Shown here piece after piece: positions 3,098-43,067 of a stretch of 64,000 nt of DNA; position 1 is the stretch's first letter; each line of letters begins with the position of its first letter. The DNA is taken from IMG/VR virus record IMGVR_UViG_3300037086_000360, positions 186,112-250,111 of that record. The stretch is one strand, 5' to 3'. The notes below the pieces were generated by a model. The model saw only the letters and a program-made list of their open reading frames with translations, was not told the DNA's origin and did no database searches. A program made the translations under genes and the position numbers.

Positions 3098-3286
3098 TTG
3101 ATGAAGAAAACATTTCTCATTTTGTCGTATGTTGGCGTCCTTGCTTCTCTAGCTCTTTTTATCAGAGCTATGGAAATACATATTGGTCTTTGGTGGATTC
3201 TCGGAGCTGTTCTTGTTTATTCATTATCAGCATCTTATTTGGTAAATCGAATCGCCAAACACTTCATAAAACTGGACTATCAGTAA
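3098..3286 (+). CDS. Small 2-TM membrane protein
   Basis: Two hydrophobic helices; in frame with the upstream ORF across a TAG. Confidence 0.5.
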   Translation: MMKKTFLILSYVGVLASLALFIRAMEIHIGLWWILGAVLVYSLSASYLVNRIAKHFIKLDYQ

Positions 3287-38618: not shown

Positions 38619-38878
38619 CAGTTGGAGACGTGATAAAAATCTCTGGTGCTATCTATATGATCGCCGCCATAAATACGAAGAAATCGTTAAAGAACCCGAC
38701 TGTCACTATAATGGGTTTAGATGGTCAATATGAGGCGCACTATAAGTCTGTTTTGTCTGATGTCAGGGCTCGACACGTTATAGGAGAAAACAATATAGCT
38801 AAGTGCTTGTTGATGTTTCGTAAAAAATGACAAGAAGCATATTTATGTGTAGTAATAATGTCCGCACAGGAGTAAGGA

Positions 38879-38959
38879 ATGCTTCTAAACAAGTTTAAGG
38901 GTCGCTTAGTGATCTTCGAAGGAGAAGATCATTGCGGATTGAATAATTCTGATTCCTGA
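38879..38959 (+). pseudogene. tmk: Orphaned 5' fragment of thymidylate kinase
   Basis: AGGAGTAAGG RBS; MLLNKFKGRLVIFEGEDHCG then LNNSDS*, versus MLLNKFKGKLICLEGQDHCGKTT at 39913. Confidence 0.85.
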
Positions 38960-38986
38960 GCAAGATAATATCATGAGGAGATTCCA

Positions 38987-39922
38987 ATGATATTATCTGA
39001 GTTGAAAAAAGTAAATTCAAAATACAAACCCCAACTTAAAGACAAAATTCAAATCACCCAATTCGTAAAAATAAAATGTGACAATAAAGAGTGCGGAAAG
39101 GAATGGGAAATATCATACTCTTACGTCTTGAAGGGACGAGAAACATATGGTAGAGATCTTTGCTATTCTTGTAAATTGAAAGAACAATATAAAAGGGGTT
39201 TGAGAGAAGAGCAGAGAATAAAGTTAGCAGAAAGAAATGTTGAAAACTCTGGAAAAACATACGAAGAAATTTATGGTACAAAGAAGGCTGAAAAATTCAA
39301 GAAAAAATTATCGAATTCAAATTCTGGAGAAAATAATCCTAATTTTGGTGGTCTTTATTCACATGGGTTTAGAGATAGGCCCCTCAACATAAAAGGTAAA
39401 TCATTCGAAGAAATATATGGTGATGAAAGAGCTGGTGAATATAAGAAAAAACTTTCAAAAGCTTCTTCGGGTGAGAACAATGGAATGTATGGAAAACCAT
39501 CTCCACAAGGTTCTGGAAATGGTTGGTCTGGGTGGTACAAAGCAAAGTATTTCAGAAGTCTTTTAGAGCTTTCATTTATAGTCAATGTGTTAGAAAAACA
39601 GAAATTACTATGGGACACTGGAGAAATAGCTAAATACAATATTCCATATGTAGATTACAAAGGAACTAATAGGAGTTATTATCCAGATTTTGTAATAGAG
39701 AATAGTGTTGTTGTTGAAATAAAACCCCACAATCTGAGAAATAGTAAAGATATATTGTTGAAGGAAGAGGCTGCAAAAAAGTGGTGTAAAAAGCATAATT
39801 TTGAATATAGAATCATAGACGAAGTGGAACGCCTTTCTGATGAAGAAATTAGAACACTTCATGATAATGAGTTAGTTAGATTCATAGATCGATATGAGGA
39901 GAAATTCAAAAGATGCTATTAA
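38987..39922 (+). mobile_element. Free-standing homing endonuclease (NUMOD-like repeats plus PD-(D/E)XK/TnsA-like domain)
   Basis: SGENNPNFG and SGENNGMYG repeats; FRSLLEL...YYPDF...VEIKP. Confidence 0.78.
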
Positions 39923-40560
39923 ACAAGTTCAAGGGTAAATTAATTTGTCTAGAGGGTCAAGATCACTGTGGGAAAACTACCGTAGGAAAGCTCTTGAATC
40001 AAGCTTTGAATGATGCCGGTATCAAATCCATCTTTACATTTCAGCCAGGAGATCCAGCTTATGGTTCTCATGCAGAACTGATTGATAAGTTTTGCACCAA
40101 GAAAGAGTATCCATTAGATCCACTGTCAAATCTCTTTGCATTTTTGTTGGATAGATCTGAACACACTTCTAAGATCGTAATTCCAGCTTTGAAAAATGGC
40201 ATCACTGTTATTTCTGATAGATGGTGGTATTCAACAATTGCTTACCAATTCTATGGTAAACAGCTTTTAGAAAAGTACTTCCTAGATAAGAAATTTGCAG
40301 GGTGGATGAATATTCTTGCATCTCACTATATGCAACCTGATATTTCATTTTATTTTCAAAGGCAGCAACAATTAATTGATAACGACAAAAACGATGAATC
40401 AGATCAATTTGAAACTGCTGATGAAGCATTCAAAAGAAGAGTCAAGAATGCTTATTTGGATATGGTCAACGACAAAATCTTTGTTAAGATTGATGTATCG
40501 AGCGATCCAAATGAGACTCTTCAAAGAGTTTTAAACGCTGATTTTTATGTAGATCAATAA
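39913..40560 (+). CDS. tmk: Thymidylate kinase
   Basis: EGQDHCGKTT P-loop, DRSEH, ISDRWWYSTIAYQ. Confidence 0.93.
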   Translation: MLLNKFKGKLICLEGQDHCGKTTVGKLLNQALNDAGIKSIFTFQPGDPAYGSHAELIDKFCTKKEYPLDPLSNLFAFLLDRSEHTSKIVIPALKNGITVISDRWWYSTIAYQFYGKQLLEKYFLDKKFAGWMNILASHYMQPDISFYFQRQQQLIDNDKNDESDQFETADEAFKRRVKNAYLDMVNDKIFVKIDVSSDPNETLQRVLNADFYVDQ

Positions 40561-40862
40561 ATGAACTTGGACGAAAAAGACATTCTAGAATCTAAGAATG
40601 ATTTTGATAAATGGCTCGAGGAAATGCGTCAAGAAAGTGTTGATAGAGTTGAAAAGAATCGTCTTGAATACGAGGCCTATCTCGCTGCTGGTGGTTGTGC
40701 TCATAGCAAATGCATACCAATTTATGACAGTGAGAGAGTTAGAAAAAAAATTATGAGTGCTGAAGAGGTGAGAAGACTTTATCCTCGTTTTTTTGGCAAT
40801 TGTCCAGACTGCGGACAACAACTCATTCAATATGCTTCATTTGAACACTATTTGGCTGGTGA

Positions 40863-43067
40863 TTGGTGATGTTCGATTGCAGGCAGAAGGACTGTCCAAA
40901 TCATCCTGAATATGTTTCGGAACCAGCAAATCTTGAAAATGAAACGAATTTCAAACATAAATTCAGAGAAGCTGCATTGAAAAACCATTATAGTAATCAA
41001 ACATTGAGTTGGGAAAATCTATCAGAAGCTGCTGGATGGATTAAGTTGGATGGGATCAGAATCTCCACCGAATGTTTGATTTGTGTGCATTGTCCAAAAA
41101 TAGATGTTCGTGAAATCAAAATCGCAGCATTAGCAAAAGATTATCTAAGAAAATGAAAATACTAGAATGTGATAAAATGGACTGTCCAGCTCATTCAAAA
41201 TATGTAAATCCTGAACCACCGGTAGTTCCAACTGGAATCTATTCGAGTACTACTGGAACATATTCTGCTGCGGTTGGTGGCGGAGGTGCAGGTTCAGGTG
41301 GTTTGATGGGCGTGGTCGTTGGTGGAGGTGGGGGTGCTGGAGTCATGACAATTAATGGTGTTCCATCATACGTCAGTAGCTTATCTTGGCCACAAATATC
41401 CGCAGTTCCACAAGAAAAACAAATATATCTCTGTTTTGGAGAAATCAGAGTCCATCCTGCCTGTCTTATGTGTTCCAATCTTCCAAAAATGGATATGAGA
41501 GAGGTTCAAATAGCCGAAAAAGCTAAGACAATGTTGGAGAGATGACCTCTTGGAGAAAATAAAATGTCGAATACAAATAGTAATACGCCTTCCTATTCTG
41601 TTTCTATTGGTGCTTCCATACTTGGTGGTGTTACAAACAGTGCTTCTTCTTCACTCAATGTTGGAGTCGATTATGCCTCCGGTAGTAGTCAATCTGACTA
41701 TACGACATACACGACTACGACTACTAATACCACCAATGTAATTTATGGTCAACAGGTTGGTGGTGGATGGCAGTGGCAACAGACTGGTTCAACAATATGG
41801 CCGTACAATCCTTCAACCACTCAACCAATTATCACAATAACTCCAGGAGTCATTTCAATTCCTTCTGTTTGGCCTCTACCTCCAAAATGGCCTGAAAATC
41901 TTCCTGATACAATTGGTCTCCTTTACATAAAAGATGGAAAGCTAATGATGATGACGGAAGAGGGTGTGGAAGTAGAACTTCTTGACCTATCTACTGCAGA
42001 AGGTGAAACTGCTCAAATTCTCATAGCCATTGCAGCCAAGAAAAAACTTTCCGAAGGAACTCCAGCAAAATAATGAGCTATAAGGATAATTGGCCGAAGG
42101 ACGCCATTGCCTGGGGAGACATCAATTCAGACGACAACTCCTACAACGTAAGGGTTCATTATTTGCCAAGTAGAAATATTTTTGTGATTTCTCCAGATCC
42201 TATGTATGCTGTGCCAATTATTGATTTAAACAAGGATCCTGACAACGAAGTGGCAAAAAGACTATTGGCCCTCATAGCAAAAAGAGTGATCAATCAATCA
42301 AATGAGAAGACATAAAGTTCACTGGTATGAATCAAATTCTTGGTGGTACGCCGAAGTTAAAGGCAGACTCCAAAAAAATCTAATTGGTGAGATTTTCTTT
42401 GAAAATGGTTATGTTGTACTATATCACGACAATCCTCGACAGAAAATAGTCCTTGGCAAGATAGAAAATGATAGTGGGATTGCAAAGAAGCTTACCACTC
42501 ACATCGCAAAAACGATGTTGGAAAAAAACGAATGAAACTAAAAGAGTATGTCAAATCGCTTCAAAAGGATCCGTCTAGTGATATACCTACGATGGGTGAT
42601 CCTTCTCCAGAAGGATTGGGCTCTATATTCACAATAGCAGGAAAGTTGTGTATGATCAATCATGATGAGGTAACTGAAATAGGTGATATAGAAGACATAG
42701 ATGAAACGATAGAAAATTTGACCGTGTATATTGCGAAAGAGCTACTGAAGGGAAAGAAAAGAAATTGAGCAGAAAATTACCACAGCCACTGCCTGGAGGC
42801 ATAAGGAAACCAACACCTCCACCTGCCCCTCCAAGAACTGTAACTCCAAAGAACATGAAAAAGAACCCATGGCTGCTCAAATTTAATGAATTACATGATC
42901 CAAGCTATTTAGGAGAGCTCCATTTTGAAAATGGACATCTTATTCTGCATCAACCGGATCACCCATACGCAGAAGAAGTAAAAATAGATTTAGGTGATCT
43001 TAATAATTCTGAGGGCATGCAACAGGTCCTCACTACTGTTATAGCAAAAAGACTGTTGATAAAGTAA
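40863..43067 (+). other. Array of seven small related genes ending in an IA(A)K..L helix
   Basis: C-termini LAKDYL, KAKTML, IAAKKKL, IAKRVI, IAKTML, IAKELL, IAKRLL; shared G.(L/I)....G beta segment. Confidence 0.6.

What the first reader, a model, noticed from the sequence alone, without database searches (positions are those of the whole stretch)
38879..39981. Homing endonuclease inserted in the tmk P-loop with a replacement N-terminus
Seen: the first 20 codons of tmk occur twice: at 38879 (own RBS, ending at HCG and stopping 6 codons later) and at 39913 (continuing into KTT). The copies differ at many synonymous positions. Between them lie an AAGATA motif, an RBS and the endonuclease, with no room for an intron core. 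Inference: the element invaded the most conserved motif and restored the gene by supplying a recoded, cleavage-resistant 5' end, without splicing.
Basis: partly seen in the sequence, partly recalled or inferred. Interest (0 to 1): 0.7.

Follow-up and report, generated by a model that had tools for sequence, protein, structure and literature searches.

The report
Endonuclease cassette splitting a kinase P-loop
A selfish endonuclease gene in a giant peat-soil phage sits inside the ATP-binding-loop coding sequence of the thymidylate kinase gene and keeps that gene working by bringing its own spare copy of the first 20 codons; relatives of this endonuclease show the same arrangement in many different ATP-binding genes.

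Summary
Window 38879-38938 and 39913-39972 both encode the first 20 residues of thymidylate kinase (41/60 nt and 15/20 aa identical). The first copy stops six codons later. The second runs into a complete 215-aa tmk.

Between them lie a 48-nt spacer and a 311-aa endonuclease: zinc ribbon, two NUMOD3 motifs and a TnsA/T7-endonuclease-I-like PD-(D/E)xK domain. Its stop codon overlaps the tmk start. There is no intron, intein or splice signal.

A relative whose tmk is 92% identical has the same leader and one intact tmk, with no nuclease and no duplication.

The arrangement is a family trait. Among 62 clusters of homologous endonuclease genes from viral contigs, 38 sit directly 5' of a P-loop gene (tmk, AAA_28, AAA_33, PNK and others; Fisher p = 7e-27). 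In 16 of them a significant remnant N-terminus lies upstream. That remnant breaks off at the Gly/Lys codon boundary of Walker A, as in the window.

It is the N-terminal, phage mirror image of the fungal mitochondrial mobile ORFs that carry a foreign C-terminus. Cleavage, resistance of the second copy and mobility remain untested.

The parts
38831..38878 (+). Native tmk leader with Shine-Dalgarno AGGAG (38868-38872). It now drives only the truncated copy A.
   Evidence: The conserved block AAGCATATTTATGT...CAGGAGTAAnGA directly precedes the ATG in the window, in nuclease-free L026 and in L031.
38879..38938 (+). Copy A: the resident first 20 codons of tmk (beta-strand 1 and Walker A up to the Gly before Lys), cut off at the insertion point.
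   Evidence: 17/20 aa and 44/60 nt identical to the L026 tmk. Nine of the differing codons are synonymous and three are conservative replacements. Homology with L026 ends at GGA, 38936-38938.
38939..38986 (+). Left end of the inserted cassette: an A/T-rich spacer. It holds the out-of-frame tail and stop of copy A (TGA 38957-38959) and the nuclease Shine-Dalgarno GAGGAG (38975-38980).
   Evidence: No significant match to tmk (p 0.97) or elsewhere in the window. It begins with TTGAATAA; related loci begin with a similar GAAT(A/T) type of sequence at the same junction.
38987..39922 (+). Homing-endonuclease gene, 311 aa. Parts: N-terminal CxxC...CxxC zinc ribbon (C31, C36, C59, C62), two NUMOD3 motifs (about residues 103-121 and 155-175), and a C-terminal PD-(D/E)xK nuclease (residues about 186-280; E194, D234, E244, K246).
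   Evidence: Pfam NUMOD3 35 bits (cut-off 20.4) and Tn7_TnsA-like_N 31.8 bits (cut-off 26.5). The profile aligns to T7 endonuclease I with FRSxxE, PDF and ExK in register. The AF2 model has pLDDT 89, and its top Foldseek hits are TnsA with probability 1.0. There are 835 homologues at E <= 0.001.
39896..39901 (+). Shine-Dalgarno GAGGAG for the replacement tmk start, embedded in the codons of the nuclease's conserved C-terminal RYEEK motif.
   Evidence: Read directly from the sequence. R302 and Y303 are (nearly) invariant in the family alignment. The dual role is an inference.
39913..39972 (+). Copy B: the cassette-borne replacement of tmk codons 1-20. Its ATG overlaps the nuclease stop codon.
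   Evidence: Codons 2-3 (CTA TTA) are fixed by the overlapping nuclease stop and are shared with the nuclease-bearing L031 allele (CTA TTG), not with L026 or copy A (CTT CTA).
39913..40560 (+). Functional-looking thymidylate kinase gene (215 aa). Walker A GQDHCGKT is at residues 15-22 (39955-39978).
   Evidence: Pfam PF02223 93 bits. 92% identical to P0001/L026 and 86.5% to L031.

Best explanation
The 1034-bp segment 38939-39972 is a mobile homing-endonuclease cassette. It is inserted inside tmk, between the Gly and Lys codons of the Walker A (P-loop) motif. It has three parts: an A/T-rich spacer with a ribosome-binding site, the nuclease gene, and, overlapping the nuclease's 3' end, a new ribosome-binding site, start codon and substitute copy of tmk codons 1-20.

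The resident 5' end (copy A) stays behind the native leader as a 26-codon dead end. Tmk is instead translated from copy B, probably coupled to nuclease translation, with no RNA or protein splicing.

Inferred mechanism:
- The nuclease cuts nuclease-free alleles at or next to the GGN|AAA junction in the P-loop DNA.
- The break is repaired from a cassette-bearing genome, using copy A plus the leader as the left homology arm and the tmk body as the right arm. This copies the whole cassette in.
- Insertion splits the recognition site, so occupied alleles would no longer be cut.

The trick is cheap because in these kinases the P-loop lies only 10-20 codons from the start.

Shown: the anatomy, the empty allele, the nuclease fold and catalytic residues, the family-wide recurrence of the same junction, and colinear RNA/DNA contigs. 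Inferred: the cleavage position, resistance of site B, and mobility.
For: Anatomy.

Empty site: L026 carries a tmk 92% identical, with the same 74-aa upstream ORF and leader, one intact tmk and no nuclease.

Occupancy is sporadic. The nuclease lies directly 5' of tmk, with its 3' end overlapping the tmk start, in the window, L031, L027, L028 and L055/56. About 28 other tmk loci lack it.

Nuclease: NUMOD3 and TnsA_N score above the Pfam cut-offs. The four T7 endonuclease I catalytic positions are conserved. The fold matches TnsA.

Family-wide pattern:
- 39 of 67 related loci have Walker A coding DNA within 200 nt after the nuclease stop, against 7 of 291 background ORFs (p = 7e-27).
- After clustering at 70% identity this is 38 of 62 clusters.
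- The Lys codon lies mostly 29-37 nt after the stop.
- The targets are different P-loop families.
- Upstream remnants of the matching N-terminus are significant in 14 loci at p <= 0.01 and in 16 at p <= 0.05, out of 40.
- In about 20 loci the remnant ends at the Gly codon preceding Lys, within about 2 nt, followed by an A/T-rich spacer and the nuclease ATG.

Copy A differs from L026 mainly at synonymous sites, so it was under coding selection until recently.

No intron was found. Contigs from independent DNA and RNA runs are colinear over both junctions, with no joints.
Against: - No biochemical evidence that the protein cuts DNA, or where it cuts.
- No near-identical occupied/empty pair is available. 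The window, L026 and L031 are all about 80% identical in DNA, so conversion tracts and the right-hand boundary of the cassette cannot be mapped.
- Near the junction, copy B is not clearly 'recoded'. In the window only 3 wobble changes fall in the last 12 nt, and in L027 there are none in the last 10 nt. Self-resistance is therefore unexplained.
- L031, the closest nuclease-bearing relative, has no copy A. Its leader drives an unrelated 144-aa ORF instead.
- About 24 of 62 clusters have no P-loop gene downstream.
- The RNA evidence comes from low-depth contigs of metatranscriptome libraries that may contain DNA.
Confidence: 0.7

Rival explanations
1. One-off accident. The nuclease is an ordinary free-standing, intergenic homing endonuclease that normally lives just upstream of tmk. 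In this phage alone, a single 'one-sided' illegitimate double-strand-break repair joined the recipient's broken left end, cut in the P-loop, to donor DNA 48 nt upstream of the nuclease. That left a meaningless duplicated stump.
For: L031 (nuclease 82% identical) has the nuclease upstream of tmk without a tmk stump. One-sided illegitimate repair at microhomologies is documented for T4 intron homing (Parker et al. 1999, as summarised in PMC2988022). This may well be how each lineage of the cassette first arose.
Against: The same stump, ending at the same Gly/Lys boundary, lies upstream of the nuclease in at least 16 independent clusters inserted in different P-loop gene families. Even L027 keeps ...FESVDHS followed by GAATTTATCT, and L031 keeps the same GAATTTATCT left end. 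A unique accident in the window is therefore unlikely.
Confidence: 0.15
2. The nuclease gene lies in a self-splicing intron, or is an intein. Copy A is the true 5' exon, joined to the KTT... exon at the RNA or protein level, and copy B is irrelevant.
For: Homing endonucleases in conserved motifs are usually intron- or intein-borne, and inteins are known to favour P-loops (PMC5050341, own knowledge). The break in copy A falls exactly at a codon boundary.
Against: No Rfam intron family matched at E <= 10. Only 48 nt lie before the nuclease ORF and 0 nt after it. Copy A's frame hits a stop 6 codons on, and the nuclease is in a separate ORF with its own ribosome-binding site, so it is not an intein. 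Copy B has a start, a ribosome-binding site and conserved coding sequence. RNA-library contigs run colinear through 38938/38939, and no joint was reported.
Confidence: 0.03
3. Copy A is retained because it has a function of its own. For example, it could be an upstream short ORF whose translation delivers ribosomes to the nuclease start, throttling or timing nuclease expression from the tmk promoter.
For: Copy A keeps its leader, Shine-Dalgarno sequence, ATG and open frame, and stops 27 nt before the nuclease ATG. Most related loci also end the stump with a stop shortly before the nuclease start. T4 free-standing endonuclease genes are known to be tightly regulated (PMC2988022).
Against: Stumps in other loci are decayed to different degrees, and some lack a start or are fused to other ORFs (L027, L031, L128). 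This fits neutral decay better than selection. No expression data resolve the question. The idea adds to the main explanation rather than replacing it.
Confidence: 0.1
4. Assembly or chimera artefact of a metagenomic contig.
For: The window comes from a metagenome-assembled viral contig, and repeats can cause mis-joins.
Against: The two copies are only 68% identical, too different to mislead an assembler. Independent runs from other studies and years give identical contigs across both junctions (X9, X2, X3, X7). Related contigs show the same architecture.
Confidence: 0.01

Closest known systems
Fungal mitochondrial mobile endonuclease ORFs (mORFs) that carry a foreign gene end (Allomyces macrogynus atp6; Glomus atp6, atp9, cox2, nad3; PMC3630166)
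   Same: An endonuclease ORF is inserted inside a protein-coding gene without an intron. The element brings a diverged substitute for the gene segment it displaces. The native segment stays as a nearby remnant. The two copies are far less alike in DNA (64-81% there, 68% here) than the native one is to close relatives. The hybrid gene is the one expressed.
   Different: There the replaced end is the C-terminus and the remnant lies downstream. The nucleases are LAGLIDADG or GIY-YIG, and the hosts are mitochondria. Here the replaced end is the N-terminus, including a new start and ribosome-binding site. The nuclease is PD-(D/E)xK with NUMOD3, the host is a jumbo phage, and the target is one structural motif (Walker A) shared by unrelated genes.
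Free-standing homing endonucleases of T4-like phages (Seg, Mob) and 'intronless homing' (PMC2988022)
   Same: A phage-encoded nuclease gene outside any intron or intein, sporadically present between conserved genes. It has a modular DNA-binding-plus-nuclease build with NUMOD-type motifs, and is presumed to spread by double-strand-break repair with co-conversion of flanks.
   Different: Seg and Mob genes sit in intergenic regions and cut hundreds to thousands of bp away. They are GIY-YIG or HNH enzymes and leave no duplicated gene end. Here the insertion point lies inside the coding motif and apparently coincides with the target.
mobE in Aeromonas phage Aeh1 nrdA ('genes in pieces') and the mobA / gene 60 bypass cassette of T4 (cited in PMC2988022; 10.1101/2022.08.31.505936)
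   Same: A free-standing endonuclease gene has landed inside an essential gene, and the phage still makes the protein without splicing. In gene 60, an insert in the target site is thought to protect against the cassette's own nuclease.
   Different: Aeh1 makes two polypeptides that assemble, and T4 ribosomes hop over 50 nt. In the window neither is needed, because the N-terminus is simply supplied again. Some relatives of the window's nuclease do show a stop-containing insert in the P-loop codons that recalls gene 60 (see Noticed in passing).
PD-(D/E)xK-type homing endonucleases (I-Ssp6803I family) and the EDxHD enzyme I-Bth0305I; Tn7 TnsA; T7 endonuclease I
   Same: A restriction-endonuclease-like catalytic core. 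The Pfam TnsA_N hit, the T7 endonuclease I catalytic tetrad, and Foldseek hits to TnsA (probability 1.0) and to the I-Bth0305I catalytic domain (probability 0.87) support this.
   Different: The known PD-(D/E)xK and EDxHD homing enzymes are intron-encoded. None is reported, in the searches made here, with a zinc ribbon plus NUMOD3 N-terminal half, or as a free-standing cassette in P-loop genes. PMC6083498 lists the six recognised families.
One-sided, illegitimate double-strand-break repair during T4 intron homing (Parker, Belisle and Belfort 1999, via PMC2988022)
   Same: It gives a plausible origin for the first duplication: homologous repair on one side of the cut and a non-homologous join on the other.
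   Different: That was an experimental rarity. Here the product has become the standard, heritable form of a whole family of elements.

Membership tests
PD-(D/E)xK (restriction-endonuclease-like) nucleases, TnsA_N / T7 endonuclease I branch | Catalytic acidic residues and lysine in the order E ... (P)D ... (D/E)xK on the conserved core | tested here: met
   E194 (in FRSxxE), D234 (in PDF), E244 and K246 (in EIKP) are invariant or nearly invariant in 29 homologues. They align with T7 endonuclease I E20, D55, E65 and K67 (residue numbering of T7 endonuclease I from own knowledge). Pfam PF08722 scores 31.8 bits against a cut-off of 26.5.
PD-(D/E)xK (restriction-endonuclease-like) nucleases, TnsA_N / T7 endonuclease I branch | Alpha-beta-beta-beta-alpha-beta core fold | tested here: met
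   The AF2 model has mean pLDDT 89, and 93-98 over residues 180-300. The best PDB matches are TnsA 1t0f and 1f1z (probability 1.0, E 4e-3 to 1e-2), then Bax1, I-Bth0305I and restriction enzymes. TM-scores are low because only the C-terminal half aligns.
Homing endonuclease genes (free-standing) | Nuclease domain joined to sequence-tolerant DNA-binding modules | tested here: met
   Two NUMOD3 motifs (35 bits, cut-off 20.4) and a four-cysteine zinc ribbon precede the nuclease domain.
Homing endonuclease genes (free-standing) | Sporadic presence at one locus among related genomes, with an intact 'empty' allele | tested here: met
   L026 is empty. The window, L031, L027, L028 and L055 are occupied. 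About 28 further tmk loci are empty.
Homing endonuclease genes (free-standing) | Site-specific cleavage of the empty allele, and resistance of the occupied allele | not testable with these tools
   Only indirect evidence: remnants end at the Gly/Lys codon boundary of Walker A in about 20 loci.
Homing endonuclease genes (free-standing) | Transfer into empty alleles by gene conversion | not testable with these tools
   No near-identical occupied/empty pair was found. No empty form was seen in the peat runs that were laid.
Group I or II intron-encoded endonuclease | Ribozyme core flanking the ORF; spliced mRNA | tested here: not met
   No intron family in Rfam at E <= 10, apart from a 25-bit chance-level hit inside the ORF. 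Only 48 nt lie before the ORF and 0 nt after it. RNA-library contigs are colinear over the left junction.
Intein | In-frame insertion in the host protein, with Hint splicing blocks | tested here: not met
   Copy A's frame ends in TGA at 38957. The nuclease has its own start in another frame. No Hint domain appears among the Pfam hits.
Mobile endonuclease ORFs with gene-end replacement (fungal mitochondrial mORF type) | Endonuclease ORF inside a coding region, with a diverged inserted copy of the displaced gene end and a native remnant | tested here: met
   Copy B is the inserted copy and copy A the native remnant. They are 68% identical in DNA, and copy A stands behind the native leader. Compare PMC3630166.
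Mobile endonuclease ORFs with gene-end replacement (fungal mitochondrial mORF type) | Replaced end is the C-terminus; LAGLIDADG or GIY-YIG nuclease; organellar host | tested here: not met
   Here the replaced end is the N-terminus, the nuclease is PD-(D/E)xK and the host is a phage. It works like this family but is not a member by descent.
Thymidylate kinase | Full-length Thymidylate_kin domain with an N-terminal Walker A | tested here: met
   PF02223 scores 93.2 bits over residues 13-203. Walker A is GQDHCGKT. There are 71 homologues, the best 92% identical.

The most novel reading that the evidence does not exclude
This is one member of a large, undescribed family of phage homing endonucleases (835 homologues at E <= 0.001). 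The family recognises the DNA that encodes the Walker A P-loop itself. It can therefore move between unrelated P-loop kinase and ATPase genes by carrying a portable 'beta-strand-1 plus half P-loop' N-terminal module with its own translation start.

In some lineages the element-borne copy also carries a conserved 5-6-nt stop-containing insert inside the P-loop codons, preceded by a strong hairpin. That would require ribosomal hopping or frameshifting, as in T4 gene 60, and would serve as protection against the element's own nuclease.
Probability: 0.35. Interest if true: 0.85.

Novelty: new variant of a known kind. Interest (0 to 1): 0.72.

Why it matters
Homing endonucleases that invade essential coding motifs are thought to need an intron or an intein to be tolerated. 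This cassette shows a third solution in phages: bring a spare copy of the short gene end that is cut off. Until now that solution was known only as the C-terminal version in fungal mitochondria.

The family-wide link to Walker A coding DNA suggests a nuclease lineage that exploits one of the most conserved motifs in biology as a landing site across unrelated genes. That would explain chimeric N-termini and short 'orphan' ORFs upstream of nuclease genes in jumbo-phage annotations. It would also give a source of natural nucleases with a predictable target class.

The work also yields directly testable substrates: the empty allele, site A and site B.

Tried and rejected
1. My own first model was a single illegitimate repair event in this phage. 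I dropped it as the main explanation once the same junction turned up across the family.

2. I considered that the 48-nt spacer is a decayed piece of tmk codons 32-37. MAFFT had aligned TTGAATAAT with TTGAATGAT of L026. A local alignment of the spacer against the whole tmk is no better than shuffles (p 0.97), so I rejected this.

3. Looking for a conversion tract by sliding identity between the window, L026 and L031 was uninformative. All three are about 78-81% identical throughout.

4. The AAGATA motif as a signal: not enriched.

5. The sigma-70 promoter and terminator scan found nothing in the spacer, and counts were at shuffle level.

6. blastn against phage GenBank records gave no match.

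7. Searching peat runs for an empty allele or a spliced form found no joints. Contigs were too short or coverage too low to exclude either.

8. RNAalifold on the hairpins of the stop-interrupted relatives: MAFFT misaligned the two sequence versions, so the covariation counts are not usable. Single-sequence folds were used instead.

9. Literature searches for a prior description of P-loop-targeting free-standing endonucleases, or of N-terminal replacement in phages, found none. The library covers open-access papers only. One search failed on syntax, and Parker et al. 1999 is not held.
Full report
**Context**

The window is the last 64 kb of a 250,111-bp IMG/VR viral contig, estimated 88% complete. 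The same DNA occurs in peat metagenomes from several studies. No GenBank phage is similar at the DNA level. The neighbourhood is co-directional: STAS-domain gene, 72-aa ORF, SLT transglycosylase, 73-aa ORF, then the finding, then a 102-aa ORF.

**Observation**

Two stretches encode the first 20 residues of thymidylate kinase.
- Copy A (38879-38938) follows a Shine-Dalgarno AGGAG, reads MLLNKFKGRLVIFEGEDHCG, then LNNSDS and stops.
- Copy B (39913-39972) reads MLLNKFKGKLICLEGQDHCG and continues KTTVGK... as a 215-aa protein. It matches Pfam Thymidylate_kin at 93 bits.

The copies share 41/60 nt and 15/20 aa. This is far beyond chance: protein score 91 against at most 40 in shuffles, and DNA score 23 against at most 16. 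The break falls exactly between the Gly and Lys codons of the Walker A motif GQDHCG|KT.

Between the copies lie 48 nt and a 311-aa ORF whose TAA overlaps the tmk ATG. Both the ORF and copy B are preceded by GAGGAG. Five of the 20 codons differ in amino acid, so the differences are not only synonymous. The AAGATA motif is not enriched.

**The nuclease**

Pfam finds two NUMOD3 motifs and a TnsA-like endonuclease N-terminal domain, both above the curated cut-offs. A 29-sequence family profile aligns to T7 endonuclease I with FRSxxE, PDF and ExK in register. The invariant or nearly invariant E194, D234, E244 and K246 therefore match the catalytic tetrad of that enzyme. An AlphaFold model (pLDDT 89) finds TnsA as its best solved relative (probability 1.0), and also the catalytic domain of the homing endonuclease I-Bth0305I. 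The N-terminal half has a four-cysteine zinc ribbon.

This is the build of a modular homing endonuclease, with a PD-(D/E)xK cutter. The family is large: 835 proteins at E <= 0.001.

**Empty and occupied alleles**

The closest tmk (92% identical, L026) lies on a short contig. It carries the same 74-aa upstream ORF, the same 44-nt leader (AAGCATATTTATGT...CAGGAGTAAnGA) and one intact tmk, with no nuclease and no duplication. Copy A therefore stands at the native position.

Copy A differs from L026 at 16 of 60 nt. Nine of the differing codons are synonymous and three are conservative replacements. It therefore evolved as coding sequence until recently.

Four other diverged tmk loci carry a homologous nuclease directly upstream, with its 3' end overlapping the tmk start: L031 (nuclease 82% identical), L027 (55%), L028 (49%) and L055/56 (a short version). 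About 28 tmk loci have none.

In L031 the conserved leader and ATG now open an unrelated 144-aa ORF, and no tmk stump is left.

**No splicing**

- Rfam gives no intron family, even at E <= 10.
- There is no space for a ribozyme.
- Copy A's frame is closed and the nuclease is in a different ORF, so it is not an intein.
- Contigs from a metatranscriptome run (X7) run colinear from copy A through the spacer into the nuclease gene.
- DNA contigs from independent runs (X9, X2, X3) bridge both junctions without a single difference.
- No joint was reported.

These are low-depth contigs, and RNA libraries can hold DNA. This argues against splicing but does not exclude a rare spliced form.

**The decisive turn: the architecture is a family trait**

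A scan of viral contigs using only nuclease motifs returned 80 loci, with 36-53% identity to the window's protein.
- Walker A coding DNA lies within 200 nt downstream of the nuclease stop, on the same strand, in 39 of 67 non-identical loci. The background is 7 of 291 ORFs in the same loci (Fisher p = 7e-27).
- After clustering the nucleases at 70% identity, this is 38 of 62 clusters.
- The Lys codon lies mostly 29-37 nt after the stop (50 nt in the window).
- The downstream genes belong to different P-loop families: thymidylate kinase, AAA_28, APS-kinase-like, AAA_33, polynucleotide-kinase type and AAA_3/5.

Upstream of the nuclease, 14 of 40 such loci have a remnant of the matching N-terminus at p <= 0.01, and 16 at p <= 0.05. 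Many more are visible by eye.

An ungapped comparison shows that in about 20 loci the remnant ends at the Gly codon that precedes the Walker Lys, or 1-2 nt inside it. Examples: TGCGGA|TTGAATAA (window), AGTGGT|TTAAAATAA (L102), ATTGGA|TTTAGATG (L107), ACAGGA|TTTATC (L075), TCCGGA|ATTATT (L077), CCAGGT|ATTGAATGA (L114) and TCTG|AATTTATC (L027). After the break comes an A/T-rich spacer of about 16-78 nt with an early stop, then the nuclease ATG. L031 keeps the same GAATTTATCT left end as L027 although its stump is gone.

**Interpretation**

Each remnant matches its own downstream gene family, and all break at the same motif position. The common cause must therefore be an event at the Gly/Lys boundary of the P-loop DNA. 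Most simply, that is where the nuclease cuts and where the cassette sits.

The element is thus [spacer + nuclease gene + replacement 5' gene end]. Insertion splits the presumed target, as an intron does. Copy A plus the leader and the gene body then provide the homology arms for later homing.

My earlier idea, a single one-sided illegitimate repair (known from T4), probably describes how such a cassette is born. It does not describe what the window's structure is now.

The conserved C-terminal RYEEK of the nuclease is encoded by TATGAGGAGAAA, which contains the Shine-Dalgarno sequence of copy B. A dual role is plausible but is only inferred.

**What is not shown**

- Cleavage, its position, and mobility.
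- Why site B (copy B plus the gene body) would resist cutting. Differences between the copies near the junction are few in the window and absent in L027. 'Recoded, cleavage-resistant' therefore remains a hypothesis. Recognition may depend on sequence further 5', which differs more.

**Comparison with known systems**

The nearest known analogue is the fungal mitochondrial mORF. There, an endonuclease ORF is inserted in atp6, atp9, cox2 or nad3 together with a foreign C-terminal segment, leaving the native C-terminus as a downstream remnant. The hybrid gene is the one expressed (Allomyces, Glomus; PMC3630166).

The window shows the mirror image at the N-terminus, in a phage, with a different nuclease class and a motif-level target.

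It differs from T4 Seg/Mob intronless homing, where the insertion is intergenic and the cut is distant. It also differs from Aeh1 mobE (a split gene) and T4 mobA/gene 60 (ribosomal bypass).

Searches of the open literature found no description of this family, nor of N-terminal replacement in phages. That library is incomplete.

**Side observations**

In seven clusters of relatives, the copy B side of an AAA_33-type kinase carries a 5- or 6-nt insert with a stop codon inside the P-loop codons: RG(V/L)P, stop, then GSGKST. All three stop codons occur. The insert is preceded by a hairpin of -20 to -27 kcal/mol (z -3.3 to -5.0) that exists in two different sequence versions. The downstream ORF stays open for 178-279 codons.

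L084 has GAG GGG TAG followed by the P-loop in the -1 frame.

These recall T4 gene 60 and may be a second way of making the element's own site uncuttable. The window's copy B has neither a hairpin (z +0.7) nor an insert.

**Verdict**

The window holds the best-preserved example found here of a widespread, apparently undescribed kind of homing cassette. Novelty: a new variant of a known kind. Interest: 0.72.

Noticed in passing
L069-L148 (viral contigs holding homologues of the window's nuclease); window 38987-39978: The whole nuclease family sits immediately 5' of genes whose Walker A motif lies within the first 10-25 codons. This holds for 38 of 62 clusters, and the Lys codon is mostly 29-37 nt after the nuclease stop. 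The genes belong to unrelated P-loop families (tmk, AAA_28, AAA_33, PNK, APS-kinase-like, AAA_3/5).
   Followed up: yes
L099:3186-3245, L101:3144-3203, L134:3134-3193, L115:3176-3235 (6-nt insert); L093:3373-3432, L109 about 3100-3185, L114:3112-3171 (5-nt insert): In the P-loop gene downstream of the nuclease, a conserved stop-containing insert interrupts the Walker A codons: GTA CC[G TAA CC]A GGT, CC[G TAG CT]A, or CC[G TGA C]A. All three stop codons occur. A strong hairpin lies directly upstream in two different sequence versions (z -3.3 to -5.0), and the downstream ORF stays open. This may be ribosomal hopping or frameshifting, or a split gene, resembling T4 gene 60/mobA. Unexplained.
   Followed up: partly
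L084:3330-3420: The tmk-like gene after the nuclease reads MNIIVEG, then TAG, and continues VDAVGKGTQ in the -1 frame (GAG GGG TAG ...). This is a possible -1 shift on a G run before a stop, again inside the P-loop codons.
   Followed up: partly
L030:1071-1250 and L029:4833-5030 (nuclease-free tmk loci): The L030 tmk has an in-frame TAA three codons after the Walker GK (GVGK RLQ stop EKLARYLN), in place of about 8 normal codons. The L029 tmk (the same contig seen in 3 samples) needs a 1-nt frame change near codon 5. These could be scars of past nuclease attack or loss of a cassette, or sequencing errors.
   Followed up: partly
L078, L085, L113, L121 (about 100 nt upstream of the nuclease ATG, and the gene after it): A sub-group of longer nucleases (376-385 aa) sits 5' of a gene starting M..L(I/L)(I/V)DG.WNLK.NF. 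By eye this looks like a FEN/RNase H-like gene, but it was not run against any profile library. Upstream stumps by eye read ...IID or ...VILE. The N-terminal replacement trick may therefore not be limited to P-loops.
   Followed up: partly
L080, L083, L087, L105, L119, L126, L138 (upstream of the nuclease): Stumps of the type IFIIRG(L/I)(P/L) followed by (L/I/D)EYK and a stop lie upstream of the nuclease, but no P-loop gene follows on the same strand. The nucleases seem stranded after loss of the target body.
   Followed up: no
L031:4570-5004 and L031:9747-10514: In the 732-kb contig with the closest nuclease, the tmk leader and ATG drive an unrelated 144-aa ORF. Its N-terminus looks like a signal peptide by eye (not tested), and it stands where copy A should be. 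A separate GIY-YIG plus NUMOD3 endonuclease gene lies 4 kb downstream.
   Followed up: no
window 39890-39915: The nuclease's conserved C-terminal motif RYEEK is encoded by TATGAGGAGAAA, which contains the Shine-Dalgarno sequence for the replacement tmk start. The same ATGAGGAGA string precedes the nuclease start at 38973-38981.
   Followed up: partly
window 40863-41156 and 41153-41545; L026:1130-1438; L029:5465-5749: Small tandem paralogous ORFs downstream of tmk share D/KCP.H..Y near the N-terminus and CL(I/M)C...P.(I/M)D.RE near the C-terminus (likely zinc-binding). One has a long Gly-rich insert. The 102-aa ORF 40561-40869 is present in the window and L031 but absent in L026.
   Followed up: no
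G000:C1:29531-29725 (locus L002, outside the window): A second, weak (32% identity, E 3.5e-4) match to the nuclease domain lies inside a 344-aa open frame elsewhere in the same phage genome.
   Followed up: no
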